64,000 bases of DNA from assembly GCA_047495785.1 (NCBI GenBank), contig JBLDXI010000009.1, forward strand, positions 2,170,001 to 2,234,000, written 5' to 3'. This document shows, in pieces, positions 4,828-38,420 of this stretch; the stretch's first letter is position 1; the number at the start of each line of letters is the position of its first letter. Below the pieces are notes generated by a model. The model was not told the origin of the DNA and did no database searches. It was given only the letters and a program-made list of their open reading frames with translations. Source of the DNA: Lepidodermella squamata (Eukaryota; Animalia; Gastrotricha). Both the position numbers and the translations under genes were made by a program.

Positions 4828-6360
4828 ATCTCACTTCATCTCAGTGCTGTCCGACTTGTATCAAAACAGCTTTGCCCGTCTCCGTGTCGGTAAATCATCA
4901 ACTGAGCCGTTCGACCTAGAGCAAGGCGTTAAACAAGGTGACGCTCTATCGCCACTCCTCTTCTCCATACTGATCAGCGACTTGCCGGACTTCCTTTCAA
5001 AATGCGGCGTCAATAGCGAGGCAAAAATCAACAACGAGACGGCGCTAGCGGCACTGAAATTTGCTGATGATACCACTGGTCTTTCCAGAAGTGTCGCTAA
5101 TATGCAAAGACTAATCAACGCTGTCGACAGTTTCGCTAAACTCCGTGGTATGGAAATTAACACGTCCAAAACGAAGATTGTTATCTTTTGCAAACGGCGC
5201 ACTGACTTTATCTTGTCTATTGCCAAGGCTTTCTCGCTCAACGGTATCCAAATCGAGTGCGTATGGACGTTCAAATACCTTGGAATTCCGCTTGCATTCA
5301 ACCTGAACTGGAGAGAGGCCACCTCAACAGGTATATCTCGCGGTCTAACGACCTTTGCGGCGATAAAGAGGAGAGGGATCCACATTGCTCAACTGAAAAG
5401 GTCACAGTTGGACACACTGATCGATGTAAAGATATATGGCTCAGCACTGTATGGCGCTCAGTTGTGGGGCGCCTTTACCGGAGCGGACATCGATAGGCCG
5501 TTGCTTAGAACCCACAAGCTAGCCTGGGGACTTAACTCCTGTACTTCGAACATAAGGACGTCTTGCGAACTGGGGCTAAAGTCGAAAACGACGCAAGCCC
5601 GCATGATGAGTACCGCCTTCTTCCTCAAGTTGAGTAACAGCCGCAATGCGCTGGCAAGAGCGGCTTTCTCAGGGTTACTAGAAAATGACTACAAATTCAA
5701 CCCGATCATCAGGGTCTCCCAACTCCTACGAGCCAGCGCACCCAATTTCGAATGGATTACTGGCCTGTCGCCGCGAGAAATGGCCTCGATGGAACGCTCT
5801 TTACAGGAAAAGGCGGCAATGTTGACAGAGCAGCAAACAATGGAGTGCATGAGGGATAAATACATCATTGGCCCGAGCCTATCGTTTGGCAGCTTGGAGA
5901 AATATGGAACCAGCCTGCGGAAGGATCTAACGAGGGTTGTTGTCCAAATTAGAACCGGTTCTGCCTTCAAACCATTTAAATTGATATCAAAAGGGGCCTC
6001 TACCATCTGCTGTATTGAGTGCGGCGCACCGGTGCTGATCTCAATGGTAACGGAACACCTGACTGAAGACTGCGCTGGCTGCCCCGTTCCCTCGGTCTTC
6101 AGAGCAATGCATCTTCAAAATGTCAACCTATGGGATATTGCAAATGACACGGAGAGGAGGCTACTTGTCACCGCCCTGAAGAAATCGCTGCAGAAGTTCA
6201 AATCTGTTTATTATTCAAATGTTATAATTTTAAATAATAATGTGTGAAAAGTAGACTAAGTTGTATTATGTAACTCTGCTAGTTCGCTATATCTACTGAG
6301 TACTATTTTTTTGATTGGATCAGTGATCGGTCAATAAAGAAACGATTGTTGTTGTTGTTG
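4828..6360 (+). mobile_element. 5'-truncated non-LTR retrotransposon (LINE; RTE/CR1-L2-like), with (TTG)n tail and TSD
   Basis: RT motifs GVKQGDALSPLLF, KFADD, FKYLG; C-terminal CxxC...H...C; AATAAA followed by TTGTTGTTGTTGTTG; flanked by GCATATCGAGC at 4817-4827 and 6360-6370. Confidence 0.93.
4829..6247 (+). CDS. LINE ORF2 C-terminal half (reverse transcriptase), open from the truncation point
   Basis: Uninterrupted frame SHFISVLSDLYQNSF...; the ORF track gives 4844..6247. Confidence 0.88.
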   Translation, partial: SHFISVLSDLYQNSFARLRVGKSSTEPFDLEQGVKQGDALSPLLFSILISDLPDFLSKCGVNSEAKINNETALAALKFADDTTGLSRSVANMQRLINAVDSFAKLRGMEINTSKTKIVIFCKRRTDFILSIAKAFSLNGIQIECVWTFKYLGIPLAFNLNWREATSTGISRGLTTFAAIKRRGIHIAQLKRSQLDTLIDVKIYGSALYGAQLWGAFTGADIDRPLLRTHKLAWGLNSCTSNIRTSCELGLKSKTTQARMMSTAFFLKLSNSRNALARAAFSGLLENDYKFNPIIRVSQLLRASAPNFEWITGLSPREMASMERSLQEKAAMLTEQQTMECMRDKYIIGPSLSFGSLEKYGTSLRKDLTRVVVQIRTGSAFKPFKLISKGASTICCIECGAPVLISMVTEHLTEDCAGCPVPSVFRAMHLQNVNLWDIANDTERRLLVTALKKSLQKFKSVYYSNVIILNNNV

Positions 6361-15671: not shown

Positions 15672-18003
15672 TTAAAGAATTCCGAATTCGTCCAGTTCAA
15701 GCATGGGAGTGGCAGAGGTTTGTCTAGAATTTGCGGCCGGTGAGTCGAAATCATCGGCAATATTCGTCGACTTGGGTACCGGGGTCGCAGTTTGACTAGG
15801 TGTGTTTTGATTGGCAGATGGCATGCAGTTGCCATCTGGATACCGCCTACGAAACCGCTCGACAGTATCCGGTTCCAGCAAACGCACCCCATCAGTTTGG
15901 TTTCCAAGAGTTATCCAATTTTTTTGGAAATTATGCGGCTAAAAATAATAAAAAAATGACTGGATTAAAGCTCGTCAAATGTTAAGCTAACCCTGCCGAA
16001 AAGCTCCAGCTTTCGGGTACCAGGTGAAAGACGTTCAATGAGACCGTAAATTTCATCGGGCTTACGACTGGTTTCTCGAACCTCGGACACTATCACATCG
16101 CAGTCCAGCAACCGACCCGTTTGTTGGTACATAGCAGCTGGTTTCCCTTTAACCGCTACCAGGCAGTGTTCCTTGCCGTGGTTCAACCAGTGCCCGGTTC
16201 GTCCCGTTCGAATGAGGCGTTGTAGCTGGTTTGTCTTGACCCAAACTACTTCGTCGACTCGTTCATATCCCCACAGGCGTAAACATTGCCGGCCAAGTTC
16301 CATAGCACGACCCGTTACCCATAGAAAGAAAAATCCATCATCTTGTAGGCCTATAAATAAAAATATGAAAGCGCTCCAATAAAATAAAAAATAAAAATAA
16401 AAAAAAAGCAAAAAACATGTGGCCACTGGGAGGATCGAACTCACGACCTTCGCGTTATTAGCACGACGCTCTAACCAACTGAGCTAAGCGGCCAGACACA
16501 TACAAGGGGCGTTTCAAGCTTTTTATGCGCCATTATCGTGTATATACATGCTGTAATTCTATTGACTATAAGCCACGTTGGTATACACTTACAAGGAATG
16601 TTGAGGCGCCTCATTTCATCATCTGACATAGTTCCATACGGCAACTCCATGTGAATATCCCAAGGCGGGTCAGCCATGATGACCGCAAATTTGCCTAGAA
16701 CTGTCATATCGAAAAATCGCAGGTCGCATTGAATCCATTGAGGCGGGAGCAGTGAAACCGCCTGATATTCCGGAAAAATCGGGTACGGCTGAGGGACGCT
16801 AGGTTGAGACGGCGGGGGTCCTCGAGGGTCCGGAGGCGGGTAGTCGATAGAATAATGAACATATTTGCAGGTATCCATGTGAAAGCAAGTGTTCAGAAAC
16901 GAGCAATCGCCTAGAGATTCGTCAGTATGGCGTCGAATCAGTCGACGAAAATGAAGCCGTTTGCAGTAGAAAGGAACGCCGGGTTGGCTGTGGCGGCGGC
17001 ATTCTTGAAGCGTGCCGTGTTCGCAGAACTTTTTCACGGTTTCGCCCTTGCTGCGGCCTTTGAACATTTCAGCGACCATGCGCTGCCGGACTGAAGGGGC
17101 GTTGACAATTTGAAGCAGCTCTTCACTCAAAGCCAGTTGCTTCTCGCATGCCGTTGGCATCGCGAGCAATTTTTCAAGGGACTGCGCTGATGTAGAGCTA
17201 GATGTCACCTCTTTGGGAGCTAAATAATACAAATATAAGGAATTATAAATAATTTCTAACTAATTTCGTTTAACGTTTTTTTTTACAGGAAATTTCAAAT
17301 TTCCAGCGTTGTTAAAAAAGTTTCACTCGGTTTCAATTTTGAAACTGATCCCCGTTGACTCAGTTAACTATTTCCACGTGTCTCATTACGTGAAGAAATG
17401 AGGAAAGAATGGACATTTTTGTATGAAACGGATCTTTTTCGGGTCGATATCAGCAAATTAGCCGGTCAAAATTTTTTAACAGGCGAAGGCAATTTCAGGG
17501 GAAATATCAAAGATGGAAATAGTCAACCGACCTGGCGTTTGCTCAGCCTCTTCGGCTAGTAGAATTCCAATAACCTTGAAGTCGACATCGACAACTGATT
17601 TTTCTGCAATGCGGATGAGATTAGCCGTCGATAGTTTCTCCAGAATATTCGCAACATCTTCGAGAGGAAGACTTTTCTGCCAATTTTTCACCAGGTTAGC
17701 GTGGATAGTTGCGTAAGAAGCGGGCAAGTCTATCACAGCTTCGTTGAGTAGGCGAAGAACAGCTACTTCTGGCTCGGTTGAGAACTGAGAAGTTTCGAGA
17801 ATTTGGCCATGGAATTTGGGTGGTTTCGTCAGAAAATCAGCGTCCTTTGAAATATCAGGCTCAATTTGTGAAATGAGTGAATGCAAATTATCAAGGCGAC
17901 GTCTCCTGGCCTCCTTCCGATCGCTTATCAGACTGGACCGTTTTCGAATTTTCAACAAATCATGCCAAACATTTTCACCAGTGTGGGTGCCTAGGCCAGT
18001 CAT
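15672..18003 (-). CDS. METTL3: m6A methyltransferase catalytic subunit
   Basis: CCCH fingers ([21 protein letters not shown]), catalytic DPPW ([17 protein letters not shown]), [52 protein letters not shown]. Confidence 0.96.
16420..16493 (-). tRNA. tRNA-Ile (anticodon AAT) inside METTL3 intron 16351-16592
   Basis: Reverse complement GGCCGCTTAGCTCAGTTGGTTAGAGCGTCGTGCTAATAACGCGAAGGTCGTGAGTTCGATCCTCCCAGTGGCCA; A and B boxes, cloverleaf, followed by oligo-T. Confidence 0.95.
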
Positions 18004-18419: not shown

Positions 18420-21400
18420 TCACAGATAATACAACTTGTTCCAGAGATTGCGGTGGGTCTCGGAATGGACGTGCTGACCGACTAGGAAAGCCAGCTTGTG
18501 CGCGTAGTGGCACGGAGCAACGACACGAATGGTTCCCGGCCAGTTGTAGTACAAATGACTAAGACGGTACGCCAGCTGATGGTGGTGATCGGGCTGAAGA
18601 GTGGTCGACTCATGAATAATATTGTAGCGGGTTGGCGTAACTGTGCCCTGGCGAACGGACTGGGCAATTACGTAGAAATCGTACGCCTTGGGATTCGTGA
18701 TAGTATTGTCGACAACAGTACCCGGGGTGGGATTGTTGATTTGTGGGCCCCGGATGGCAAAGAAGCGGGGGCGGATTCGTTTCTGGACGACGATAACCGA
18801 CATTTTCGGTTGGTAGTCGGGTCCGAATTGCTTAGCCACCTCTTTCAGCTGCTGAACCTCGCTATCGTGTACGGCTTTTAGCTGATTGTCTGCAACGCCG
18901 TCGCGGTAAAAAAGAATAATCGCAGGCAGGACGCCGTTTTTCGAGTGGTAAGTCTTGATAGCTTCAGACAGGCAGACGACTAGATGATGAGAAAGCTCGC
19001 CGCGAGCGTCATGGCCAAACGAACGTGAGTAGAACTTAGTGAATGTTGGGTCAATTGTAGCGACGAAACCGCCGACTGATTTGCCTCGAGCTGCCGAGTC
19101 GTGGTACGTGTCGAAGCCGCAAATCATCGCAGTCTTGCACGGAATCGGGACGCTCCACAACGCACCGCCCAACTTGACGCAAACTTGCTGCATGATTTTG
19201 GTGACGACACTCATCATACCCTTGCGCAGCGTGTTCACAACAACGCACTGAAACGACAAAAACAGTAAATATTTGAAACCAGTGACAAATAAACGGCCAA
19301 TTTTTCGAAAATCCAATACAGTTATTCAATCAAATTTTTAAGCTCTGATTTCCAGCTTTAAGAAGCTAGATTTATATATATTATAGGCAAGTTCAGCTTT
19401 TCTACGACTATCGTTGCAAGAAGTGCGGCCACGCAATTCGATTAGCTCTCGAGTTAAAAGGGCATCATGGTAACGACAAAAACGTCTCAGAGTTAGCGTT
19501 TACTGCTGTTGGCGGCGACGGTGACAGAGGTACATTATTTTTGATAAACTGATAAACTGATTTTTCACTTGTTTTGATTCATTTCGGGTCTAATCTCATC
19601 TAAAGTGGCGGTCAAAATTATAGAGCAGCCCCCATACGTCAACTTTGGGATCTTCCATTCAATATGAAAAGACATAATTCATATTGAGCGTCGTCAAAAA
19701 TTTTGCGAAGCATGTCATAGCAGGTATCAGTACGCATGACACGATGAATGATGTCCATGTTCAACAACAGCTCGTTCTCGTACTTCGAGTAGGCGACCCC
19801 TCAGGCGAAGCGGCTGTGGATCCAAACGACGGTTCCAATCGGACAAAATCTGACGGGCCTTTTCACAGTTGGCGACACGGCGACCGAAATCGGTATAACG
19901 CTGCATACGGTTCGTCGGGTTGAGACGGGTGATCTCGCCGAATTCCTTCATCAGGCGGAAATCAGCACGCTGGGCGTCGGTCAAACCGGTCATGAAACAC
20001 AACTCCGGGACCAACTTGTTAACACGGCCTTCCTCCTTAATACGACGAGCCATTTTTCGCGGACGGGTGACGAGCAGAGGCTGCTTTACGTCTTCCTTCG
20101 GATCAATGTTGTTCCGGCGAGCATCGTCAAAAATTTTGCGAAGCATATCATAGCAAGTGTCGGTACGCATGACGCGATGAATGATGTCCATGTTCAACAG
20201 CAGCTCGTTCTCGTACTTAGTGATCGTCATCGCGTAACCAGGCCATATTGTCATACCGAAATTCTGCATGTTGATTGCAGCGGCCGGGTCGAAGAAATCC
20301 CTCTTGGACTGCTTCAGCTCGAGAGCGGTTTGCATGTGTCGAATGGCAATGTCCAGGATACGAACCGCCTCGTCCGAGTCGGGTGAAACCTCGCCAGTTC
20401 GGCGAACTCGGAGGTTGATGGTCGCACTTCATCTTTCTGCTATTACTAGGCCTTAGCATTGCCATCATTCTTAAACTATCAGTGGGATCGAGCTCGTCAA
20501 ATAATTTGGGAATATCAACGGCGGTACTAAGGGGCCCGGAATTGAGCCAATCAAAATTATCCGAAAAGGAAAGGAGAATTATAAATATCGTCGACCACAT
20601 TGAAACGGAAAAGCCCCGGGTATCATGCCGGTTATAGATTATAAAGTGGCGGTCAAAATTATAGAGCACCCCATGCGACGAAACATCGGGCGATTTGATC
20701 TCCCTGATAACTTCCGCAATTTTCAGTCCGATTTGAATTATTGCAATGATGACCCCTGATCCCCTGATCCACTTATTCCAAGTATGGTTCCTTTCATTTT
20801 TACCTTCAAACTGCGTCTAACCCCAAAATTACTGTCTGTTATATGCTCGGGTCAGTCAAAATTATAGAGCACCCATGCTTCGATAAATTTTCATGAGCAT
20901 TAGATGAACTTTCCTAGCCGATTGAAGGCATTTCATGGGTCAACAGTAAGCTCCGACTCTTATGTGAGATCCATTTTGTTTATGTCGATCAGGAAAAATT
21001 AATAAAATCAAATTTTTTGACTGTAGAAAGAATTTATGGTTTTTCAGAGCACTAAAATGCTTCTGCAACTGGTTTCTTGGATTCAACTGGCCATTTCCAT
21101 CACGGAAATGTCCCTAGCCGCACTGGAGTAACAACAAATCCCAACTGGAAAAGCTGTTTTGCAATATTGCCGGCGAATATGAACGCACGCGCGATACTTT
21201 TCAGCTAGTCTGTAAAGTTACAAAACTGTCTGAACACGAGAGACTTAGGTGAATTTTGAAGCTTTAGCTTCATTCTTTCAAAATAACATTTTTCAGATTT
21301 TAGAGACTGTTTTTCGGGTAAAAAAATTGGTCTAAACGCCATGTTGCGGACAGACATTTTCAAAATGTAAATTTTGGGTATTAAATTTTACTACTGTTTC

Positions 21401-24202
21401 TCCTTTTATAAAATGGTATGGTGATATGTGTTTCTAAGACCGTAGGATGACTGAATCACTGAATTTTGGGGAAAATTGTGTGCACTTCGTTCAACATAGT
21501 CCACATTCGAAAAAAAACCATGTTGCGGACAGACTTTTTTTAGAAAGGGTGGCGGCATGAAATTTTCGTCTATCGCAATCAAAAAATATGCATTCGATAG
21601 AGCTAGGTTCACTTAATAAGTCAAACACTATGGAGCGGACCTGTTAGCCTTTTGTCAATTTTGCGGAATTTCAAAAGGAAACAAAAAGGAAAAAACGAAT
21701 TTTCAGCACTTTGTAACAATATTTGTTAGTTACTGAAACGTATCAACTCTTGTTTTTGATGAGTTTTACCAGCTATGGGTTGACTTGAAATAAAAAATAG
21801 CCACCATGACTATCCCAACGCACGATGGTAGTTTTTTTGCGAAAATGTGGTTTGACGTGTCTGTCCGCAACACCGTCAAACCAGGTGGGTAGGTAAATTT
21901 TTGGGTGTTTTGGTGTTGTTCGAAAAATTCCTCGGTTAAAATAAGGGCGATGTAGGGTGTTTCCAAATGACTTTAAGCATTGATGTATTTTTGGGGAATT
22001 AAATAAAGGCTTTTTTGTTGAGGACAGACATTTGCGACAAAGTCATGGAATGACCCATAAGCATTCAAATTTTGATAATCCAACATCTTATGTATATCTA
22101 AAACAGGTATAATTACGAACCTGAGATGGAATGCCGACGTCGACGAGGGTGAACTTCTTGATTGCTTCGTAGATCTGGCGATCCTTGCGGCCCAGCAGAC
22201 ACATGATCAGCTTGACGTTAGGCAACGTCGAAGCTTGCTGACAGGCAGCCTTGTAGCCATCAGCACGGGTGTTGTCGATTGGCAGAGGTTTAGGCGGCGG
22301 GCACTGATATTATTAAAAATAAAATTGTTAAATTTAAATACATTTTGGGCAATGAAAAAGTTGATTTCTCCAGTTATTTTAAAGAAACATGACAACAGGT
22401 AGACGATTCTATAGCTTTAAACTTTCACGCGCATTCCGAATGGCTTTCCAATTTCCCGAGTGCAGGATATACCCAATAAGAGAAATACGAAAAAATTACT
22501 AACCTGAATGCCAAGCCCAGATCCAATGCGGCAGACAGCGTCAGAAAGTTCGCGGGCGGCTTGTTCGTCACGACGCGGGAAGATCAGGACCCACGGATCC
22601 ATCGGCTGAGGGTCGCATGCCTTCATGTTCTTAATTGCGTTCGACCATTCCGCGCTCTGGTCAGGGCGAATTGGAGCACTGCCGGTGGACAGCTCAATTG
22701 GCGGGAGTAGGCGACCCCTCAGGCGAAGCGGCTGTGGATCCAAGCGAAGGTTCCAATCAGACAAAATCTGACGGGCCTTTTCACAGTTGGCGACACGGCG
22801 ACCGAAGTCGGTGTATCGCTGCATACGGTTCGTCGGGTTGAGACGGGTGATCTCGCCGAATTCCTTCATCAGGCGGAAATCAGCACGCTGGGCGTCGGTC
22901 AAACCGGTCATGAAACACAACTCCGGAACCAACTTGTCGACACGGCCTTCCTCCTTAATACGACGAGCCATTTTTCGAGGACGAGTGACCAGCAGCGGCT
23001 GCTTCACGTCTTGAATGACCACGTTGTATTGGGTACGCATGTAGTCGGCGATCGAAATCTGCTCGCCCTTGCGCTCGAACTTGGTTAGCGGGCAATTTTC
23101 TGGCGGCCACAAGATGTCATCGATCGTGTGCGTCTTGTTGTTGTACTTGGTCAAGACGATGGTTCCAATCAGCTCCTTGGCAACGGCTTCCTTCGGATCA
23201 ATGTTGTTCCGGCGAGCATCGTCAAAAATTTTGCGGAGCATATCATAGCAAGTATCGGTACGCATGACGCGATGAATAATATCCATGTTCAGCAACAGCT
23301 CATTCTCATACTTCGTAATCGTCATCGCGTACCCAGGCCAAATTGTCATGCCGAAATTCTGCATGTTAATAGCTGCGGCTGGGTCGAAGAAATCCCTCTT
23401 GGACTGCTTCAGCTCGAGAGCAGTTTGCATGTGTCGAATGGCAATGTCCAGGATACGAACCGCCTCGTCCGAGTCGGGCGAAACCTCGCCAGTTCGGCGA
23501 ACTCGGAGGTTGATGGTCGCCCCATCACTCTCGCGCTTCGAATGCCACATGTTCTCCTGTAAAAGACACAGTTTACAACTAGTTTACAAAATAAATATTT
23601 CCTGAAACCAATAACTAGGTTTCAACAGGCTACAAATTAACTGTATAAAATACTTACCTCACCCAAATTTTTTGGCGTGATCAAATTCGCGCCATTAAAC
23701 GAGAAAACCTCGCCGATTTTGTCTTTATGCGCGCGCACAAGTTGACCGCGCAGGCTGAGGAAGTCGATCTCGGGCTCGAAATCGACATGATACTCATACA
23801 TACACCAAGTCGGGCCGCCCTGAATTTTGAAGAAATTCGAAACCAATTCCACCGGTTCGCCCATCTTGCCTAAAATAGCAAACACAAAACATACATTAAA
23901 AATATCGCGTTTGCATAACTTGAATTACCTTGAGTACTAGTCACATTTTGCGGCCTGGTCAGAGGGATGACGATTGATTCCATACGACGTGCTCTTGCGG
24001 CCTGAAGGCGCTCCATGCGGCCCTTGGCGTCGACCGGACCAGACTGTTCGCGACCGCGTGGGGCGATTCCACCACGCGGCATCGCGGTTGTGGCTTCGGA
24101 TTTCGAGACATCACTTGGGGCGTCTGGGCCAGGAGTCGTAAGACCCTCGCCGGCGTCCCCGCGGCCGCGAGCGCGACCACGAGCTCGACCCGCTGTTTCC
24201 AT
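18420..24202 (-). CDS. PIWI: PIWI-clade Argonaute, slicer residues retained
   Basis: N-terminal GRARGRARG, PAZ (VLTKYNNKT...LVPELC), MID (YEAIKK...IPSQCV; KLGG), PIWI (GFDTYH, YRDGV, HLYYNWPGTIRV, YAHKLA, LYYL). Exons ~23929-24202, ~23658-23870, 22504-23557, 22121-22303, 18420-19247. Confidence 0.96.
19601..20877 (+). repeat. Tc1/mariner-like terminal motif, three direct copies
   Basis: TAAAGTGGCGGTCAAAATTATAGAGCA is identical at 19601 and 20642; the core GTCAAAATTATAGAGCACCCATG recurs at 20855. The repeat is direct observation; the Tc1 identity is inferred. Confidence 0.7.
19686..20425 (-). pseudogene. Three rearranged Piwi coding fragments inside Piwi intron 19248-22120
   Basis: 19686-19787 matches ~23214-23315; 19787-20094 matches 22705-23012; 20092-20425 matches 23187-23520. 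Confidence 0.93.
21342..22029. repeat. Dispersed 14-mer TGTTGCGGACAGAC, four copies (one inverted); probable transposon remnant
   Basis: Direct copies at 21342, 21521 and 22016 (1 mismatch); inverted copy at 21859-21872. Confidence 0.7.
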
Positions 24203-25499
24203 TTTTTTCTTTAAATCGAACAAAAGTTACCTAAACAAATCAATGACATAAAACATAAAAATCAATACAGGCAGAATACAGGCATGGAAAAAGCTTGATC
24301 ACAAAACGAACAACTGAAATGAGCGCCGACGGAAATTCAGACTGAGATTGGAGATGAAGATCTTACGTCACGCAAATTCCAGATGGTGATCGTAATTCAA
24401 GACAATGGTGTGAGTAATGCGCTAGCGTGTGCGGCGCAATGCGTGCGCAGTCTTGAAGTTAAGCACAATAACGGAACAACAATAGGCCTATCAAATTACT
24501 AGGCGGCGGAGTTATGAACAACTTCACAAAACCGTGCTAACATTTCTGAATTCTATTTGAAATGCTTGTAATTTTCGGTCGCCGAAAATCAACTTTAGCG
24601 CCGCGGTAATAAATATAGCAATAGATGTAACGCCGCCGGGCAAACAGTGAAAACATAGATTAACATGTAAAGGATTCTGCTGTCATCTAATAGGCATATA
24701 ATGAGGAATTACAGAGCCTTGTCACGGTTCACATAGAAATTTATTACCGCTATCGTAAGAGGTGCAAGAGACCGGAATAGCCATGTTATTGTGACTAGCG
24801 AACAGTGGCAAGAAGGCCACAGTTTATTGCAATGAAAATGATAGCGCTGAAAATGGCCGCTTTCATGAGAGATGTACATTCAGCGTATCACAGATAACAG
24901 AAGACACCAGACTACGCCAACGTTGATATTATACAATCGTCCGATGGCTCCCTAATGCTGGCATTATTTGCATTTGCATTGCACAATGTTTGGCGAGATT
25001 TTTTTCTTGTGCGCTGCATATTAACCATGTTCACAAAGGTTTTATTGTTATCACGCAAATCAGGTCGCAAATACGCCGCATTGCATCTATAGGAAATCCC
25101 AAGAATTTCCCTGGAAAAATTTAGGAATTCAGCTGTTTCCGGCAATGATTCCGTAAAATTCAGAGAGAGCGGGTAAAATTGAGCTATGTACTTAACTTGT
25201 GTTGCGGATTCATAGCGCGATCACGCCCGAAAAAAATTTGATTCCATAGCCTGCTTTCAACGCCGACTTCAAAAAATTCGGAGAAGCTCACTTTTGTTTC
25301 CAACATTTATGCGATTATTTGAGAATATTTTCGCATCATGCAGCAATTCGAACCAAAAATTCAATTTCGGCAAATTAAAAATGGCTTATTAAGCTGCTTA
25401 TTTTCATTCGTTTCTTAATGAGGGAGAAAAAACGCTAATCAGCCCCTCACTAAACAAAGTTAAGAGACTGCAATCATGCCATTTTTATGGGGTAGCAAT

Positions 25500-26863: not shown

Positions 26864-28499
26864 ATGGCTTATTACCTGATCACCGCAGTGTTTGCTGGCC
26901 TGTTGTATGGAATTCATCGATTTGTGATCGATAAATTTTATAATTTGCCACCTGGCCCTACGCCATGGCCTTATTTGGGTGAACTAGTTATCATTACCGG
27001 AAGAAATCATGCTAACAAGTTCACTTAACAGGAAATCTTTATCACTTGATTTCTCTTGGAAAAAGGCGTCCCTGGGAGCTCTACTTGCAATTGGCTGAAA
27101 CCTACGGGCCGGTGTTCACATTTTATTTTGGTCAGTTAAGGTGGACTATAGTGACTGGAACCGAAGCGACTCAGGAACTACTGGTCAAGCAAGGAAAAAC
27201 TTTTTCATCCCGACCAATAACCGAGCTTCCTGGGATGGAAGAACTTAAACCTGGAGTGATATTCTGTAACGGAGATGAATGGGTGAAACGGCGCAGATTT
27301 TGCATTCGAACCATGCGGGATTTCGGAATGGGTATTCCGTCGTACCAAATTACCGCATAAATCCATTGAATTTATGTCTATAAAGGAAAAATGGCGATAT
27401 CAGAACGAATTCACGAGGAAATAGGTCATCTGATTGCCGAAATAGACTCTTACAAAGACAAACCATTTGATCCTCGTCAACTTCTTGCCAATGCTGTGTC
27501 AAACATAATTTGCTCTATAGTCTTTGGAAAGAGGTTAGCTGGAATTTGTATATCTTTGTTTATATAAAACTAGCCGCAAACACATTTAGGTTTGATTACG
27601 GCGATCCGGAATTTGTTCGTCTATCTCTTCAACTTCAACGAATATTCAACAGGAAATTTACTGACAACGCTATTTTTATCATCATTCCAGCCTTGCGTTA
27701 CATCATGAAACCTAAGCAATCGAAGGATTTGATAGTATTTCAGGACATGATGACAGAAATGGTTGCGAAATCAGTAGCCGACCATCGAAAAGACTACAAC
27801 CCGGACAACATGAGGGATTTTATTGATTTATTTATTCAAAACGAGCTCGAAGAGGATGGAATTGACATGGAAGCGTTTACGTTTGTAATGTTGGATATGT
27901 TTGTTGCTGGTACCGAAACTACGGCAACTGCTTTAAATTGGAGTTGGCTGTTTTTGGCTCGCGATCCCGATGTTCAGAAGCGATGCCAAAATTTGATTGA
28001 CTCGGTAATCGACACGGATCGTTATCCCAATTTATCAGACCGACCTAAAATGGTTTACATTGATGCTGTTATGAACGAAGTGTTGAGACATGCCTCGGTA
28101 TTTCCGTCCGGAGCTATGCACTGCAACGTCGGAGAGAAAGCTACCTTGGCGGGCTATGACATTCCTGCTAATTCGATAATTTCTTTCAGCATTGCTGCGC
28201 AGCACCGTGATCCTAAGTATTGGGTCAATGCCAATGAATTCATCCCTGATAGATGGCTAGACCCCACAGGTACAGCTATTGTCAGCCACTCAAGCCATTT
28301 CCTGCCATTTGGACTCGGACCACGCGTGTGCCTGGGCGAGTCTCTTGCCAAAGCTGAATTCTTTATTTTTGTCGTTTCGATTTTACACCGCTTCAATCTC
28401 ACTCTGGTTAATCCGTCTTCCGTTGATCTGAATGCCGGTAGTTCGGGAGTTACACACGTTCCACCCCGATACGAAATTATTGCGACAAGGCGCAATTGA
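26864..28499 (+). CDS. Cytochrome P450, CYP2 clan (copy a; 3 introns)
   Basis: LPPGP, WxxxR, AGTETT, EVLR, PDRW, FGLGPRVCLG; introns 26979-27031, 27332-27385, 27534-27589. Confidence 0.93.
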
Positions 28500-28718
28500 A
28501 TTGAGATGTTCCACGAAGGACTAAACAAGCATCCAAACTGTGCAATAATGTTATATTTAAAAATCTCTCTGATGTATTGTTTTTTGTTTTCAGAATGGTA
28601 GCGTAATATACATAATTTATATCGGAAACATTTTAGGAAGGATTCTCTCAATATTATTTGTCAACGAAGTATGATCATTAAACTCAATTTTTTGATTATT
28701 TATAGGTCATTGTTGGTT

Positions 28719-30244
28719 ATGTTTTTGTTTTTACTGCTTGTTTTTGCATTGATCGTTGTGCTGATTCTAATTTACGGTCTTCATGTTTACTTACTCGATA
28801 TACGATATCGTTTACCTCCTGGGCCACCACCGTTGCCTTTCTACGGAAATATGCTGCGATTGAAAGAAGGACAACCAAAACCCTGGCTCATTTTCAGAGA
28901 TATTTCAGCTAAATATGGTTCTATTTCAACGTTTTACCTCGGCATGTTTCGAATGATTCTTCTGGAAGGACCTGCAGCAATCAAAGACGCTTTAGTTTCA
29001 CAGCAAAAAGATTTCAGTAATCGAGCAACTCTATTTTTTCCTGGATTCGAGCATTATCCGCCAGGATTGATTTCTGCTAGTGGCGATATTTGGTCGAGGA
29101 GGCGAAAATTCTCCGAGTTGGCTTTTCACGAGATTGGCTTGGCCCGGATTGAAGAAATCATTCGGGCCGAAGTCGCGCATTTTGCCGATGAAATTGGCGA
29201 ACGAACATTTCGACCTTTCAACCCGCAACCTCACATTGCAAGTGCTTCCTCTAACGTAATGTGTGCTATGGTATTTGGAAAACGTTTCCAGTACGACGAT
29301 CCTGAACATATTCAATTTCTATCAGAATTGGATAAAATGAATAGAGGTCGTTTCAAGGGCAATCTAAATCACTTCGCCTTCCCTTTCCTGCAATATTTCT
29401 ATAAACCTGTTCAAGTTTTGGAGGCTCAGCAATTGCGCCATGTAATTGCTGAGCGCATTGACAATGCAATCGAAGATCATCGGACAGATATCAAGGTGGA
29501 TCTTCTACGCGACTTTGTCGATGTTTTCATCAAATACGAATTTTCTGACGACGGTGTCGATTTTGAATCGTTCGTCGAGGTTATGACGGATTTTTTTATT
29601 GGCGGTGCTGAAACAACGGCTACAGCTTTAAGCTGGTCTGTTCTGTACTTATCTACCTATCATGACATTCAAAGAAGATGTCACGACGCCATTGACCGGG
29701 TTATTGACTCCGATCGGTTACCATCCGCCGAAGATCGGCCTAAACTAGCCTATATCGACGCAGTGATGTGCGAAGTTTTACGGCATGCTACTATTCTGCC
29801 TTTGGCGCTATTTCACGGAATTATCGATAACGAAAAAGTTGAGCTGTCGAGTATGAAGAGTCATATTATATCCTAATGAAAAAAATTGAAATTTCATTTT
29901 GCGCAGGCTATGACATTCCGCAACGATCTATCATTGCGTACAATTTATGGGCCCTTCACCACGACCCGATTTATTGGACCGAGCCTGACTTATTCAACCC
30001 AGAAAGATGGCTTGATCCGAATGGAAAACTGCTGAGCCATTCTTCTTATTTCATGCCGTTCGGGGCTGGTCCTCGCACTTGTATCGGCGAGCAACTGGCA
30101 CGTACTAAATATTTTATTTTTCTCGTGGCGCTACTTCAACGTTATAACTTTGCGTTGGCCGATGCCAAGGTCACCCTTGACAGCGGAGTTCCGGGTTTTA
30201 CTTACGCTCCGCCTAAATATAAAGTTATCGCCACGAGACGTTGA
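28719..30244 (+). CDS. Cytochrome P450, CYP2 clan (copy b; 1 intron)
   Basis: LPPGP, GGAETT, EVLR, PERW, FGAGPRTCIG; intron ~29851-29907. Confidence 0.92.
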
Positions 30245-30639
30245 TGAAAAATTGGCGTTTCTTATTTTTTCTTATTTATCATCTTTCTCTCTCTTTCATC
30301 TTCAAAATCATGTTGTGTGTTTTCACGACCGTTTGACAGCAAGTTTTATTTATTTACAAACTGCTTGATAGAAAAATCCGTTGTTCTATTGTTGCTGCTA
30401 GTCACGGATGGTACCAATTTCTACAGAGATTTGATGCATGACTTGGGTTGACTTTCGGTTTGTATCTGAATTTTATCTAAATGAAAATAAATGTCTGTTA
30501 CCGAATGGTTAAGGCTTTTTCAGGGTGGGTTGATGACACGGACAATGGCTGGATAATTATCTGGGCCAGCGTAAGTGTTGCTTGCTGATTTCACTTAACT
30601 TTCTGGAATTTCGATTCAATCCGTTTTTTTGCTATTTAG

Positions 30640-32452
30640 ATGGACTCATTTGAAGTTTTTAAAAGATTAACAGCTGGAGTAAAATTTGACTATGGCAGAT
30701 TCAGGAAAGATGCTGAACAATTGAAGGTTGATGCTCTGGTGCTAGATTTTGCTTTTAAACATATTTATATCTATTTTCTAGCTTCTGCGGCCTAAATCGG
30801 TTGAAAAACCTGTCGAGCCGCCAAAGCCGAAGTTACCACTTGGATCAAAAGTTGACGAGGCCACGCGAATTCGCGGCGAACATAAAATTCACGTATCTGG
30901 CTCTGATATTCCGAAACCGGTCGAAGCATTTGAAAGTCTGGGTGACACGGTCGACCCTCGTCTCATAACTGCGGTGCGTGAAGTCTTCAAATTCAAACAG
31001 CCAACGCCAATTCAGATGCAAACATGGCCAGTTATGATGGCCTCTCGAGAAATAATGGCCTGTGCACCCACTGGTTCCGGCAAGACTGTCGCCTTCTTAC
31101 TTCCAGTGGTCAATCATATCATTAAAGCCAAAAAAGAGGCGAATTATGAGCGTGGTATCCGGGCTTTGATTCTAGCCCCAACTCGAGAGTTGGCTAAACA
31201 GACCTATCTGGAGGGCCTGAGGATGACTGAAGGAACGGGCGTTAACATCAGCTACCTTAATAAAGTTACTACAAACGCGGCTTGGGCGAAGAAGGTCGCT
31301 AAGCGGGTTGATTGCCTAGTCACCACGCCGAATCGGTTGATTTTTCTGTTGCAACAAGATCCGCCACTAATTTCCTTACATCACGTTCAATGGCTGGTGG
31401 TCGATGAGTGCGATCGGCTGTTTGAAGCTGATGCTCAGGCTGAGCAGAACGAGAAGGCGAAAGGCAAAAAACGGAACCAAGGTAACCGCCCGTTACGTTC
31501 TTTCCGAGACCAACTCGGTATCATTTTCGGCGCTTGCGATTCGATGAAGCTGAGGCGGGCGCTTTTCAGCGCGACTTTCAGCCCGGAAGTCGAGGAATGG
31601 TGCCGTTTGAACTTGGACAACGTCGTCGAGGTTTACGTTGGCGCTAAAAACACAACAGCTGAGTCTGTTAAGCAGGAATTGATTTTCACTGGAGATGAAC
31701 ATGGGAAATTAATCGCATTGCGTAACATCGTTCAAACCGCCTTCGAACCACCCATGTTGATTTTCGTTCAATCTAAAGAGCGAGCGAAGGAATTATTTGC
31801 CGAGCTGGTCTATGACGGTATTAATGTCGAAGCAATCCACAGCGACCGAACGCAAGCTCAGCGAGAAAATGTTGTTCAAGCCTTCCGCGAGGGAAAAATT
31901 TGGGTGCTAATTTGTACCGAATTGATGGGTCGTGGTATCGATTTTAAGGGAGTTCGTTGCGTCGTTAATTACGACTTGCCGACCAGCCCCATCGCTTATA
32001 TCCACCGCGTTGGTCGAACAGGTCGTATGGGCCGGGCTGGTCATGCGATTTCGTTTTTCACGAAGCAGGACGCGCCTTTCATTCGGGGTATAGCTTCAGT
32101 TTTGGCGGAATCTGGCTGCGAAGTCCCTGAGTTTTTCCTGAAGCTGCCTAAAGATTCTGAAGTAGATCTGCGAACTAAGGAAGAGCGGGCTAAGTCGAGG
32201 AAACGAGAATTCAAGAAACAAAGCAACCACCCTAGTCACAAGTCAAAATCGAAAAAGCCTAAAATGACGGTTCCTCAGCGTGAAACGATTCGAACCGCCC
32301 CGCAACCCGAGTTGAGTAAAATCCACAAGAAGAAGTGAGTGCTTTGTTTTTCCAAACTCTTTGATAATTTGCAATTATTTTCCAGGAGAATGCTCAAGAA
32401 AGCTCGTTTTGAGCACAAACGACCTCGCAACACTGCTGAAAGTTCTTCATGA
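30640..32452 (+). CDS. DDX52: DEAD-box RNA helicase DDX52/Rok1
   Basis: MDSFEVFKRLTAGVKFD N-terminus, PTPIQMQ, APTGSGKT, PTRELA, DECD, SAT, WVLICTELMGRGIDFKGV, HRVGRTGR. Confidence 0.93.
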
Positions 32453-32558
32453 TGAATATTTGCTCCAAAGAATTCTTTGTTGTATTGCAATAAAAGATAT
32501 GATATGAATACAGCTATAACCTCGAGTTTTTTTGTTATTCTTAGAATTTGGCTGGAAG

Positions 32559-34231
32559 ATGATTTTAATGATATTACTAGCCCTTGTGGCTGCTCTCTTC
32601 TTGTATGGAATTCATGCGTACGTGTTGGACAAGCGATATCGCTTACCCCCTGGGCCTAGGCCACTCCCTTTCATTGGCAATGCGCCGTTGTTTTTCAAAG
32701 AGAAACGAGGTTGGATGGTGTTTCATAATTTATCGAAAGAATACGGCCCGGTATTCACGTTCTACATCGGCCAAATGCGCCTTGTATCTCTAAATAGCGC
32801 CAAGTCAGTCAACGAAGTGCTTGTGCAACAGGGTAAAGCTTTCAGTGATCGACCGATAACAATAACGCCGGGGTTTGAAAATATTAAGTTGGGCGTTGCG
32901 CTAGCCGATGGTAAAGAATGGCAAGTGCGGCGACGCTTTTGTCTTAAGGCAATGCGTGATTTTGGCATGGGTAAAACCGCAATAGTCGAAAATATCCACG
33001 ACGAAACTCGGTTGTTCTTGGATGAAATCAACAATCGCGTCGGTTCCCCTTTCGAGGCAAAACTGTTACTGAGCAATTCGATTTCAAACGTGATTTGCTC
33101 GCTGGTTTTTGGCAAGCGATTCAACTATGACGACCCACGTTTTATCGAACTGGTCGAAAAAATGTCGTTTATTTTCAACGAGTCATTTGTTGCTCGGTTT
33201 ATTCTCTTTGCTTTGCCAGCAATTCGACACGTTTTCCGACCAAAACAAGCCGATGTTGCCATTGCCCTCCAAAGCTGCATCGCCAAGTTGCTGAAAGAAG
33301 CTGTCGACGAGCATCGGAAAGACTTCAACGAAAATAATATTCGAGATTTCCCGGATTTATATATTCAATCTGAACTTGGGCCTATCGATGAATCGTTCGA
33401 TTTCGAGACCTTCGCCTTCATAATGGTGGATATGTTTGTTGCTGGTACTGAGACAACTGCAACTGCGCTGAATTGGACGTTGTATTTCCTGACCAAGCAA
33501 CCTGAGATCCAGCGCAAATGCCAAGAAGCAATTGACAAGGTTAGTGATTTTGAAATATTAATGGCGGGGCCCAAGCCCGATTTCGACCCGTACGCGTTCG
33601 GGCCGGCGGTCGAGTAACGACGCTCTACCACTCCGCGCTTGGGCCGCTCTAAAACGTGCCCGCAAGCGTCATCTACTGCTAACACATTTTCGACGAATTT
33701 TTAACGCGAGCACAAAAATGAAAATTTCTCTTCTATTAGGTCATTGGGACTGACAGATTGCCACTGTTGACCGATCGCCCGCAACTTGTTTATATCGAAG
33801 CCGTGATGTGTGAAGTCCTGCGACGTGCGACTGTCGCCCCGCTAGCCATAATGCATTGCAACTTGAACGCATCTGGGTCGATTGCTGGCTACGAAATTCC
33901 TGAGAAGACTCTCGTCTCCTACAACGTTTGGTCTGTGCATCATGACGCAGAATATTGGACCAATCCGTTCGAATTCAACCCTGATCGCTGGATTGATCCG
34001 AAAACCGGAAATTTACTCACCCACTCGACTCATTTCTTGGCGTTTGGCGCGGGTCCACGAATTTGCCTGGGCGAATCGCTAGCTCGAGTCGAGTATTTCA
34101 TGTTTTTGGTGGCTTTGCTGCAGCGTTTTTCATTCGAAATGGTTGATTCGGAAAACGTTCGAATGGAAAACAGCTCTTCTGGCGGGGCTCATTTTCCACC
34201 ACCGTACCAGGTCATCGCTTCCAAACGCTAA
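32559..34231 (+). CDS. Cytochrome P450, CYP2 clan (copy c; intron 33540-33739)
   Basis: LPPGP, AGTETT, EVLR, FGAGPRICLG; close paralog of copy d. Confidence 0.93.
33562..33645 (-). other. tRNA-like GC-rich structured element in the CYP-c intron (SINE head, pseudo-tRNA or Pol III ncRNA)
   Basis: 9-bp closing stem GGCCCAAGC/GCTTGGGCC, A-box-like AGTGGTAGAGC, B-box-like GGGTCGAAATC, ends CCGCCA; absent from the paralogous intron 36166-36219. Confidence 0.55.
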
Positions 34232-34346
34232 CAGTCAACTACAGCTGGACTTATAAGTATTGCTTGCAAATTTCGACTCTGTCGTAACTTTTTTCATGAT
34301 TTTCCATTTTCCTAATATATTTGATTGCCATTGCAAAATTGTAGGA

Positions 34347-34545
34347 AGATTAATTTAGTTATATTTTCCGGAATTGTTCTGGTACTTTCTCTACGGAGTG
34401 CATACATATTTTTGTTGGATATGCGTTTAAAGTTTACATCAGGGCCTACTTCTTCACCTTTATTCGGATGTGCCCTGCCTCAGCTGAAAATTATGAAATT
34501 CCATAAATTATCGAATGAGTTCGGCCCGGTCAATATGTCCCAAAG
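34347..34545 (+). pseudogene. Truncated CYP 5' remnant, sister of copy e
   Basis: ...LLDMRLKFTSGPTSSPLFG...FHKLSNEFGPVN parallels copy e (LLDKRYKLPPGPTPLPFFG...FHKFSKEFGPVN); upstream spacer matches 36712-36832. Confidence 0.85.
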
Positions 34546-34583
34546 TCTGAGCGATGAAGCCTGACTAATTTAACTTTTGCTCA

Positions 34584-34651
34584 AGCACTATCCAGCACCA
34601 TTCTGTCCCGCACCTGTTCAGCACCCATCCACCACAGTGCTGGATATTGCT
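34584..34651. repeat. 15-bp inverted repeat near the breakpoint of the CYP remnant
   Basis: AGCACTATCCAGCAC ... GTGCTGGATATTGCT (1 mismatch), with internal CAGCAC-like repeats. Confidence 0.6.
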
Positions 34652-35184
34652 GGGTTGGCCCGAGTCTATGTTGTTCCCGTCGACAGGATATAATTCAATG
34701 AGGGCTGGACAGCCAAACACCAAACAGCAAGCAACACGGGTGGCGATGTTAGGTATCGCAGAACTAAGATCATCAAGGAAAACAGGGAGGCCCTAATCCT
34801 CGGGAGAGCCTTCTAGCTATAAATCCTTCGCGGAACCAGTGAATTCATAATTTTTTGATTGATTTATATTTTTACGACGGGCGAAAAGCATCTGTTCAAC
34901 GTTTGGCCGTGAGATAAATAAGATGATTTTTGAGCCAACCGATCAGGTTTGGAATATTACGAATAACGACCAATCAGAACATTTTAGATTTTCATTCTCA
35001 GTCATTCTCTAATGTTCACTATGCAATTCTCGACATGATTCTCGACATGATGACAACGTATGTGTGGCACAGCCGTTCACTCTTTTTTATTTCCAATCCT
35101 CGCACGTTGGGCCATCTTGCTTTTTCCATCTTGCCCACCATAAGTACTGTTATTCTTCCATTTTTCATAGAATTTAGCTGGAAA

Positions 35185-36711: not shown

Positions 36712-36832
36712 CGTTCAATTTCAGCCGGACACACAAGTATTGCTTGCTAACATTGACCATGTCGTGTCATTTTTCCATGATTTTCTTAATTTAATCTATA
36801 TTTGACTTCCATTATAAAATTTAGGATCTAAA

Positions 36833-38302: not shown

Positions 38303-38420
38303 TTTATTTACTTGATTTTTACTTCTAAATCGCTTGCAGTAACAAGTTTTCTTTTGATTTGTCAGCTTAAACCAGAAAATTCTGTATGATTAATATAGAT
38401 TCTTGTAAATTATTTGAAGT

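What the first reader, a model, noticed from the sequence alone, without database searches (positions are those of the whole stretch)
19601..20674. Piwi intron carries a stitched cassette of Piwi coding fragments between Tc1-like end repeats
Seen: the 2873-nt Piwi intron (most introns here are ~55 nt) contains three out-of-order pieces of Piwi coding sequence. They are joined by 1-3 nt microhomology; the AAG junction at 20092-20094 deletes 59 PAZ codons in frame. A 10-bp fold-back (TCAATATGAA/TTCATATTGA, 19659-19687) abuts the first piece, and identical 27-bp repeats at 19601 and 20642 bracket the set. Inference: either a Pack-type DNA transposon captured the host silencing gene, so piRNAs made against the element would also hit Piwi mRNA (TE counter-defence or Piwi autoregulation), or this is a templated-insertion repair scar at a transposon break.
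Basis: partly seen in the sequence, partly recalled or inferred. Interest (0 to 1): 0.88.

Follow-up and report, generated by a model that had tools for sequence, protein, structure and literature searches.

The report
Piwi-copy repair scar in Piwi intron
An unusually long intron of a Piwi gene holds a real, recently made patchwork of three fragments copied from other Piwi gene copies, beside the end of a Tc1-type transposon; it is most likely an inert DNA-repair scar, not a mobile element that captured the host's silencing gene.

Summary
A minus-strand Piwi gene has a 2873-nt intron (19248-22120); the same intron is about 75 nt in a related species. It contains three abutting, same-sense pieces of the PAZ exon (A 20088-20425, B 19787-20094, C 19686-19787). 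They are joined by 1-3 nt microhomology, with an in-frame 177-nt gap, a 10-bp fold-back at the C edge, and 27-nt identical repeats at 19601 and 20642.

New here:
- Of 44 substitutions against the resident exon, 42 are synonymous (dN/dS 0.011). A, C and the resident exon are three distinct versions. The pieces were therefore copied recently (at most about 1% neutral decay) from other functional Piwi copies, not from the neighbouring exon.
- The flanking repeats look like Tc1/Bari-type transposon ends (a TA flank, and a 12-nt match to the Bari1 terminus). Both are left ends in direct orientation, and no inverted partner, transposase or complete target-site duplication was found.

Best reading: a microhomology-mediated templated insertion at a transposon-end break, probably inert. 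A mobile Pack-type element is not supported. A small-RNA role, genomic copy number and the donor loci could not be tested, because this genome is absent from the searchable collections. An earlier scan note (s1-374274) made the same synonymous-variant observation on this same stretch.

The parts
18420..24223 (-). Piwi gene, the only one in the window. It has an RG-rich N-terminus, a Piwi_N exon, the PAZ exon (about 23556-22507), a linker/MID exon (22309-22121) and the Piwi-domain exon (19247-18420).
   Evidence: Pfam PAZ 1e-26, Piwi 3e-76, Piwi_N 3e-6. tblastn with related and distant Piwi proteins finds only this gene and the cassette. Closest named relatives are animal Piwi/Siwi proteins at no more than 38% identity.
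19248..22120 (-). Phase-0 intron of 2873 nt between the linker/MID exon and the Piwi-domain exon. It is a lineage-specific expansion.
   Evidence: GT..AG boundaries read. The orthologous intron in two related metagenome contigs (L001, L002) sits at the same codon and is about 75 nt.
19601..19631 (+). Repeat copy 1: a TA followed by a Tc1/Bari-like terminal sequence (left-end orientation, interior to the right).
   Evidence: 27 nt identical and 30 of 31 to copy 2. Shares a 12-nt exact stretch with the Bari1 terminus printed in PMC8834629. 29 of 30 nt, again after a TA, occur in an unrelated animal contig, L028.
19659..19687 (.). Perfect 10-bp fold-back with a 9-nt loop. Its second arm overlaps piece C by 2 nt.
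   Evidence: one of only 4 such hairpins in 64 kb.
19686..19787 (-). Piece C, homologous to PAZ-exon 23214-23315. It is out of frame with A-B.
   Evidence: 89% identical to the resident exon and 92-93% to piece A. All 11 differences from the exon and 7 of the 8 differences from A (the 8th lies in the junction codon, outside the 33 scored codons) are synonymous in the Piwi frame.
19787..20094 (-). Piece B, homologous to PAZ-exon 22705-23012.
   Evidence: 95.5% identity; 12 synonymous and 2 non-synonymous differences; a 110-nt stretch is identical to the resident exon.
20088..20425 (-). Piece A, homologous to PAZ-exon 23183-23520. It joins B at AAG (20092-20094), skipping 177 nt (59 codons) in frame.
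   Evidence: 94.1% identity. 19 of 19 true differences are synonymous; the apparent 20th belongs to the B side of the junction. The skipped segment has no GT..AG ends, so it is not a spliced intron (junction sequences).
20426..20641 (.). 216 nt of unassigned filler between piece A and repeat copy 2.
   Evidence: No match elsewhere in the window by blastn or tblastx, and no Pfam hit.
20642..20672 (+). Repeat copy 2: a TA followed by the Tc1/Bari-like terminal sequence, in the same orientation as copy 1.
   Evidence: Sequence on either side of the 31-mer is not significantly similar to the flanks of copy 1 (P about 0.6).
20845..20875 (+). Repeat copy 3: core only, 203 nt inside copy 2. It is placed like an inner transposase-binding direct repeat of an IR/DR-type Tc1 element.
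   Evidence: Direct-repeat binding sites in Bari, Sleeping Beauty and Minos are described in PMC8834629.
22705..23520 (-). Stretch of the resident PAZ exon that is homologous to the three pieces. It is not their direct source.

Best explanation
The cassette is a real, recent and probably inert scar of double-strand-break repair. A break at or just inside the left end of a Tc1/Bari-like transposon lying in this intron was repaired by a poorly processive, microhomology-primed copying process. Candidates are synthesis-dependent or polymerase-theta-type end joining, or MMBIR/abortive gap repair.

Inferred order of events, read on the plus strand:
1. A 10-nt snap-back.
2. About 100 nt copied from one Piwi gene copy (piece C).
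3. A switch, on 1 nt of homology, to a second Piwi copy, with about 300 nt copied (piece B).
4. A 177-nt jump forward on an AAG, then 338 nt copied (piece A).
5. 216 nt from an unidentified source.
6. Rejoining at the transposon end, which left that 27-31-nt end on both sides.

The donors were other functional Piwi copies (paralogues, homeologues or very divergent alleles), not the exon 3 kb away. The whole block is removed with the intron.

Shown: the anatomy, the junctions, the synonymous-only divergence, the recency, the transposon-end character of the repeats and the lack of an inverted end. Inferred: the enzyme or pathway, the single-event order, the existence and location of the donor genes, and the lack of function.
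For: Donors and recency:
- Over 245 codons there are 42 synonymous and 2 non-synonymous changes, dN/dS 0.011. dS to the resident exon is 0.32 for A, 0.19 for B and about 1.2 for C; A versus C is 0.53.
- A copy of the resident exon decaying neutrally would give about 64% non-synonymous changes (P about 2e-16).
- Non-synonymous change bounds neutral decay since insertion at about 1.1% per site or less (per-site list).
- The A-B reading frame is still open for 233 codons.

Template switching:
- All six piece ends lie inside one 1-kb exon and none is at an exon boundary.
- Junctions have 1-3 nt of microhomology.
- An exact fold-back sits on the C edge.
- These features match published junction types: polymerase-theta snap-back and templated extension (PMC4912351) and gap-filling capture at TIR transposons, with a median of 2 bp microhomology (PMC8277862).

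Transposon end:
- The homology starts sharply at TA|AAGTGG in both window copies and in the unrelated contig L028.
- There is a 12-nt exact match, in the same register from the terminus, with Bari1.
- A core copy lies 203 nt inward, like an inner direct repeat.

Context:
- The intron is about 75 nt in relatives, so the 2.8 kb was gained in this lineage.
- The intron also holds a second short repeat family and a second fold-back.
Against: - The donor Piwi genes were not found. The window holds only one Piwi gene, and this genome's proteins are absent from the collections. Their existence rests on the substitution pattern alone.
- Why a break in a Piwi intron should be filled mainly with Piwi sequence is not explained by a random filler model. 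It may reflect homology-assisted pairing with paralogues, abundant germline Piwi transcripts, or partly ascertainment, since only pieces with a homologue in the window can be recognised.
- Templated insertions of 100-340 nt per segment are long for classical polymerase-theta repair.
- The two flanking ends could be two independent solo transposon ends rather than a duplication made by the event (cannot separate these).
- Lack of function is assumed, not shown.
Confidence: 0.6

Rival explanations
1. A mobile Pack-type Tc1/mariner element captured Piwi fragments, transposes as a unit, and yields piRNAs or siRNAs that hit Piwi mRNA. This would be transposon counter-defence, as TART-A does with nxf2.
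For: - The flanking repeats do look like Tc1/Bari ends.
- The Piwi pieces are antisense to the direction in which such an end would drive transcription, so an end-initiated plus-strand transcript would be antisense to Piwi mRNA.
- Perfect matches of 38-110 nt to the resident exon exist.
- There is a precedent for capture of a piRNA-pathway gene by a transposon (PMC7785250).
- First-stage notes report Tc1/IS630 elements elsewhere in this genome (untested).
Against: - Both ends are left ends in direct orientation. No inverted partner exists in 64 kb, even at 7 of 25 mismatches.
- No TA-flanked right end, no transposase and no second copy in the window.
- Two direct ends cannot be excised as a unit by a Tc1-type transposase (established knowledge of the family).
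- In animals, single-copy captures are mostly transposition-independent (PMC8277862).
- No small-RNA data are available.
Confidence: 0.08
2. RNA-templated variant: the pieces are cDNA fragments of abundant germline Piwi-paralogue mRNAs, made by a retroelement reverse transcriptase with template jumps. They were captured at the break, or inserted with a 27-31-nt target duplication.
For: - All pieces lie within one exon, so an mRNA source is not excluded.
- Reverse transcriptases jump templates at microhomology.
- An RVT_1 open reading frame lies in the window at 4844-6247.
- The near-perfect 27-31-nt direct repeat could be a long target-site duplication.
Against: - There is no poly(A) or retroelement tail at either edge.
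- No exon-exon junction is present to prove an RNA origin.
- The duplicated sequence is itself a DNA-transposon end that occurs a third time nearby.
Confidence: 0.12
3. Collapse of an ancestral tandem array of three Piwi genes. Deletions fused the 5' half of one gene to the 3' exon of another and left exon remnants in the hybrid intron.
For: - The order A-B, then C, then the Piwi-domain exon is colinear with a tandem array.
- It would explain why Piwi sequence lies inside Piwi.
- The three versions differ as old paralogues would.
- In a related organism two Piwi versions are a mosaic of identical and divergent blocks, suggesting paralogue exchange.
Against: - All six piece ends fall inside one 1-kb exon. 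None coincides with an exon boundary, and no other exon or intron remnant is detectable by blastn or tblastx.
- At least four independent recent deletions would be needed.
- The remnants show almost no neutral decay.
Confidence: 0.07
4. Artefact: a chimeric read (for example from whole-genome amplification) or an assembler mis-join between Piwi paralogues or haplotypes.
For: - Fold-back and microhomology chimeras are typical of amplification artefacts.
- First-stage notes list many microhomology and fold-back junctions elsewhere in this genome (untested).
- No read-level data are available.
Against: - Junction overlaps of 1-3 nt cannot arise from k-mer or overlap assembly errors.
- Three donors stitched within 740 nt and embedded in 2.8 kb of unique intron is not the usual pattern of haplotype duplication.
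- Unique chimeric reads rarely reach a consensus.
Confidence: 0.06

Closest known systems
Single-copy Pack-TIRs made by transposition-independent gap filling in animals (Tan et al. 2021, PMC8277862)
   Same: Host gene fragments sit inside or beside a TIR-transposon sequence. Breakpoint microhomology is 1-3 nt (their median is 2 bp). The block appears single-copy. The location is within a few kb of a homologous gene.
   Different: Here only left ends are present, in direct orientation, so it is not a Pack-TIR by structure. The filler has three pieces from at least two donors. The donors are not the neighbouring exon but diverged functional copies.
Polymerase-theta-mediated end joining, synthesis-dependent MMEJ and MMBIR templated insertions (PMC4912351, PMC2943611, PMC5068794)
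   Same: Snap-back fold-back at a junction, serial template switches on 1-3 nt of homology, and short copied stretches.
   Different: The copied segments (100-340 nt) and the total insert (about 1 kb) are longer than typical theta-mediated inserts. The templates lie in trans, in paralogous genes. The enzyme is not identified.
TART-A capture of nxf2 in Drosophila melanogaster (Ellison et al. 2020, PMC7785250)
   Same: A fragment of a piRNA-pathway gene is associated with a transposon sequence, with the potential for antisense small RNAs against the host gene.
   Different: TART-A is an active, multicopy retroelement with demonstrated antisense piRNAs. Here there is no evidence of mobility, copy number or small RNAs, and the block lies inside the target gene's own intron in sense orientation.
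AT-chX repeats derived from vasa exons, and Su(Ste)/Stellate (Kotov et al. 2019, PMC6486647)
   Same: Fragments of a germline gene's coding sequence are copied elsewhere and could make piRNAs against the parent.
   Different: Those are amplified repeat arrays with measured piRNAs. This is one cassette with nothing measured.
Bari1 and IR/DR-type Tc1 elements (PMC8834629)
   Same: A TA-flanked terminus containing the same 12-nt core at the same distance from the end, with a repeated binding-site-like core about 200 nt inward.
   Different: No transposase gene and no right end. Only about 31 nt is recognisable, and the interior is unrelated.

Membership tests
Pack-type TIR transposon (Pack-TIR / Pack-MULE-like) | Two terminal inverted repeats of one transposon family flank the captured DNA | tested here: not met
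   All three copies of the end motif are on the plus strand. No reverse-strand copy exists in 64 kb at up to 7 of 25 mismatches. There is no significant inverted or direct repeat at the intron ends.
Pack-type TIR transposon (Pack-TIR / Pack-MULE-like) | Target-site duplication (TA for Tc1/mariner) on both sides of the unit | tested here: inconclusive
   A TA precedes each left end. With no right end, a matching TA cannot be assigned.
Pack-type TIR transposon (Pack-TIR / Pack-MULE-like) | Internal host-gene fragments and no transposase | tested here: met
   Three Piwi pieces. No transposase domain in any intron reading frame of 40 aa or more at E up to 1.
Pack-type TIR transposon (Pack-TIR / Pack-MULE-like) | More than one genomic copy (for the mobile kind) | not testable with these tools
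   No copy elsewhere in the window. The genome itself is not in any searchable collection.
Tc1/mariner (Bari-like) terminal sequence | Homology begins at a TA, and the terminal motif resembles a known family terminus | tested here: met
   Sharp TA|AAGTGG start in two window copies and in L028. 12-nt exact and 14 of 17 match to the Bari1 left end printed in PMC8834629, Table 1.
Tc1/mariner (Bari-like) terminal sequence | DDE transposase gene between the ends (autonomous element) | tested here: not met
   No Pfam transposase domain in the intron. At best this is a non-autonomous or truncated remnant.
Microhomology-mediated templated insertion (TMEJ / SD-MMEJ / MMBIR scar) | Inserted segments are copies of sequence elsewhere, joined with short microhomology | tested here: met
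   Three segments homologous to the PAZ exon, with junction overlaps of 3, 1 and 2 nt.
Microhomology-mediated templated insertion (TMEJ / SD-MMEJ / MMBIR scar) | Exact template(s) identifiable | tested here: inconclusive
   The only homologue in reach differs at 4.5-11% of sites, all silent, so the true templates lie outside the window.
Transposon- or repeat-borne anti-host piRNA source (TART-A/nxf2, AT-chX/vasa type) | Small RNAs antisense to the host gene arise from the captured fragment | not testable with these tools
   No small-RNA or transcript data. The orientation is sense to the host gene and antisense to the transposon end.

The most novel reading that the evidence does not exclude
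The Tc1/Bari-like left end at 19601 acts as a weak promoter, as Bari ends do. It would drive a plus-strand transcript through the cassette that is antisense to the PAZ exons of all Piwi copies. Paired with the sense pre-mRNA, this would feed small-RNA production against Piwi itself. That would be either a transposon-derived anti-Piwi module or a self-limiting feedback on Piwi dosage, built from fragments of sister Piwi genes.
Probability: 0.07. Interest if true: 0.85.

Novelty: new member of a known kind. Interest (0 to 1): 0.4.

Why it matters
If the best reading holds, this is a well-preserved natural example of multi-step template switching during break repair at a DNA-transposon end in an under-sampled animal lineage. 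The junctions are still legible.

The silent-site pattern also gives an indirect result. This genome should carry at least two more functional Piwi copies whose protein sequence is identical over these stretches despite dS of 0.2 to more than 0.5.

It shows how a 75-nt intron can grow to 2.9 kb, and how coding fragments of a gene family can be scattered among its members.

It would matter much more if the block were transcribed antisense and made small RNAs against Piwi. That would be a second, independent case of a transposon-linked sequence aimed at the piRNA machinery. Nothing tested here supports that, and the structure argues against mobility.

Tried and rejected
- Exact-protein look-ups of the cassette reading frame and of the PAZ exon in public assemblies found nothing on record.
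- Protein searches with the PAZ exon gave a nearest relative at 69% identity, from one ENA metagenome, and everything else was below 40%. The genome's own proteins and any paralogues are out of reach.
- A protein-pattern scan of JGI metagenomes was blank.
- An 18-mer scan of metagenome contigs gave 28 hits, about the number expected by chance. Only L028 extends the match, to 29 of 30 nt.
- A search for more Piwi remnants or other window sequence in the intron (blastn word 7, tblastx) found none.
- A search for TIRs or target duplications at the intron ends scored within the shuffled range.
- Pfam on ten intron reading frames at E up to 1 gave only sub-threshold zinc-ribbon noise.
- The idea that the 177-nt gap is a spliced intron of a donor mRNA was rejected. 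No GT..AG or GC..AG fits within the 3-nt junction ambiguity.
- The idea that the flanks of the two 31-mers are homologous (a larger duplication, or two full element copies) is not significant.
- The organism could not be identified. DDX52 is 50-58% identical to many animal phyla and 74% to the same unnamed metagenome organism. Rfam finds only a tRNA.
- 'Argonaute' occurs in no note.
Full report
**What is there**

The region holds one Piwi gene on the minus strand. Pfam finds Piwi_N, PAZ and Piwi domains in successive reading frames. tblastn with a related protein and with distant Piwi proteins finds only this gene and the cassette in the 64 kb. The nearest named proteins are animal Piwi/Siwi proteins at 38% identity or less.

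The intron between the linker/MID exon (ending ...PSQ) and the Piwi-domain exon (starting CVVVN...) runs from 22120 (GT) to 19248 (AG), which is 2873 nt. Two contigs of a related organism from an ENA metagenome (69% protein identity) have an intron at exactly the same codon, and there it is about 75 nt. The extra 2.8 kb was therefore gained in this lineage.

**The cassette**

BLASTN of the intron against the window gives three matches to the PAZ exon and nothing else:

| Piece | Cassette | PAZ exon | Identity |
|---|---|---|---|
| A | 20088-20425 | 23183-23520 | 94.1% |
| B | 19787-20094 | 22705-23012 | 95.5% |
| C | 19686-19787 | 23214-23315 | 89.2% |

C is also 92-93% identical to the matching part of A. 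All three pieces are in the gene's sense orientation and abut directly.

- A and B join at an AAG (plus-strand CTT at 20092-20094) and skip 177 nt, which is 59 codons in frame. The skipped stretch is the core of the PAZ fold; Pfam sees only the last third of PAZ in the cassette frame.
- B and C share 1 nt.
- C and the next sequence share 2 nt with a perfect 10-bp fold-back (19659-19668 / 19678-19687).

Only four such hairpins exist in the whole window, and two of them are in this intron.

**The substitution pattern**

This is the main new result. Across 245 aligned codons there are 44 differences from the resident exon. Of these, 42 are synonymous and 2 are not. The apparent third non-synonymous change is simply the B side of the A/B junction.

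| Comparison | dS |
|---|---|
| A vs resident exon | 0.32 |
| B vs resident exon | 0.19 |
| C vs resident exon | about 1.2 (33 codons) |
| A vs C | 0.53 |

Overall dN/dS is 0.011. In the 102 nt that all three share, the resident exon, A and C each have private silent changes.

Suppose the cassette were a copy of the neighbouring exon that then drifted. About 64% of the differences should then be non-synonymous, and the probability of seeing 2 or fewer of 44 is about 2e-16. The divergence therefore accumulated while all three sequences were functional coding sequence. The pieces were then copied recently: the two non-synonymous changes bound neutral decay at about 0.35%, with a 95% upper limit of about 1.1% per site. 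The A-B frame is still open for 233 codons. C, although out of frame with A-B, differs only silently in the Piwi frame, so selection on the cassette itself cannot explain the pattern.

The simplest reading is that this genome has at least two more functional Piwi copies (paralogues, homeologues or extremely divergent alleles) and that these were the templates. They are not in the window, and the genome is not in any collection I could search. They remain inferred. A first-stage note on the same stretch (s1-374274) had noticed the synonymous pattern, and my counts confirm it.

**The flanking repeats**

The 27-nt identical repeat (30 of 31) at 19601 and 20642, and a core copy at 20845, are all on the plus strand. 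No reverse-strand copy exists in the window, even at 7 of 25 mismatches.

Similarity starts sharply at TA|AAGTGG and does not extend significantly into either flank. The same 29 of 30 nt, again preceded by TA, occur once in an unrelated animal contig that carries a B-box/NHL gene (L028). The other 27 hits of that scan are chance-level.

The motif shares a 12-nt exact core, in the same register from the terminus, with the left end of Bari1. That sequence is printed in Table 1 of PMC8834629. The review also describes Bari-type ends as short inverted repeats plus direct-repeat transposase-binding sites, which fits the core copy 203 nt inward of 20642.

So 'Tc1-like end' is supported. However, these are two left ends in direct orientation, with no right end, no transposase domain, and no terminal repeat or duplication at the intron borders. 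Two explanations remain open:
- They are two solo ends of one family.
- A single end had its first 27-31 nt duplicated by the insertion event, like a long target duplication.

**Mechanism**

The following features fit one episode of microhomology-primed, poorly processive copying with repeated template switches at a break in or at a transposon end:
- Pieces of 100-340 nt.
- All six ends inside one exon, and none at an exon boundary.
- Direct abutment with 1-3 nt overlaps.
- A snap-back at one edge.
- A position 57-85 nt inside a transposon end.

This is the process described for polymerase-theta and synthesis-dependent end joining (PMC4912351, PMC2943611). It is also described for transposition-independent gap filling, which produces most single-copy gene captures at TIR transposons in animals (PMC8277862: cis bias, median 2-bp microhomology).

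A collapse of a tandem Piwi array by deletions would need at least four recent deletions, all ending inside the same exon, and would leave no other remnant. I rate it unlikely. An RNA or cDNA template cannot be excluded, because no exon junction is spanned. The 177-nt gap has no splice-site ends.

**Why Piwi inside Piwi?**

This is not settled. Possibilities are:
- Homology-assisted pairing of the resected break region with paralogues. The Piwi-domain exon is only 400 nt away from the break.
- Abundant germline Piwi transcripts.
- Ascertainment, because the 216-nt unassigned filler (20426-20641) may come from a gene that is not in the window.

In the related organism two Piwi versions are 86% identical in protein and 85% in DNA, but as a mosaic of 100% and 50-70% blocks. 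That hints that Piwi copies exchange sequence in this lineage.

**Function**

The pieces are sense to the host gene, so the pre-mRNA carries no antisense Piwi sequence. C and A are direct repeats, not inverted, so no hairpin RNA forms.

A transcript started at that end (Bari ends have weak promoter activity) would be antisense to Piwi mRNA and would contain perfect matches of 38-110 nt to the resident exon. This resembles TART-A/nxf2 (PMC7785250) and AT-chX/vasa (PMC6486647), but nothing here tests it. I give it about 7%.

**Artefact**

Overlaps of 1-3 nt are not what assemblers produce, and the block sits in unique sequence. Without reads, an amplification chimera cannot be excluded. First-stage notes mention many microhomology and fold-back junctions elsewhere in this genome (untested). 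Those could point either to a genome-wide repair habit or to a library artefact.

**Verdict**

- This is a new member of a known kind (filler capture at a DNA-transposon end), with an informative twist: the donors were other functional Piwi copies.
- Interest is moderate.

Noticed in passing
window 21334-22042: A second short repeat family lies in the same intron. A 14-17-nt core (TGTTGCGGACAGAC) occurs four times, three on the plus strand and one on the minus, against 0.3 expected. The minus copy sits in the loop of another perfect 10-bp fold-back at 21848-21883. It may be miniature-element debris or further repair junctions.
   Followed up: partly
L001:10001-11633 and L002:1418-3047: Two Piwi N-PAZ-MID reading frames come from one ENA metagenome sample (86% protein identity). 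They alternate between blocks of 100% and 50-70% DNA identity, and both contigs end in the same 141 nt inside the Piwi-domain exon (an assembly-graph node). This suggests two paralogues or haplotypes sharing a 3' half, or gene conversion.
   Followed up: partly
L028:4647-4676: An unrelated animal metagenome contig carrying a B-box/NHL (TRIM-like) gene has 29 of 30 nt of the same TA-flanked transposon-end motif. This suggests a widely spread, possibly horizontally transferred, Tc1/Bari-like family.
   Followed up: partly
window 19899-20008 vs 22817-22926: A 110-nt stretch of piece B is identical to the resident exon, while the silent sites on either side differ at about 17-26%. This may be a gene-conversion tract between Piwi copies.
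   Followed up: no
window 27510-42151: A tandem cluster of at least four cytochrome P450 genes flanks a DDX52-type DEAD-box helicase (30974-32338). The P450-DDX52-P450 order is conserved in the related metagenome organism (L031, L032).
   Followed up: partly
window 4844-6247: A reading frame with a reverse-transcriptase (RVT_1) domain, so a retroelement lies about 13 kb from the Piwi gene.
   Followed up: no
window 16420-16493: A tRNA gene (Rfam 60.7 bits) on the minus strand sits at the edge of the MT-A70 (METTL3-like) reading frame, just downstream of Piwi.
   Followed up: no
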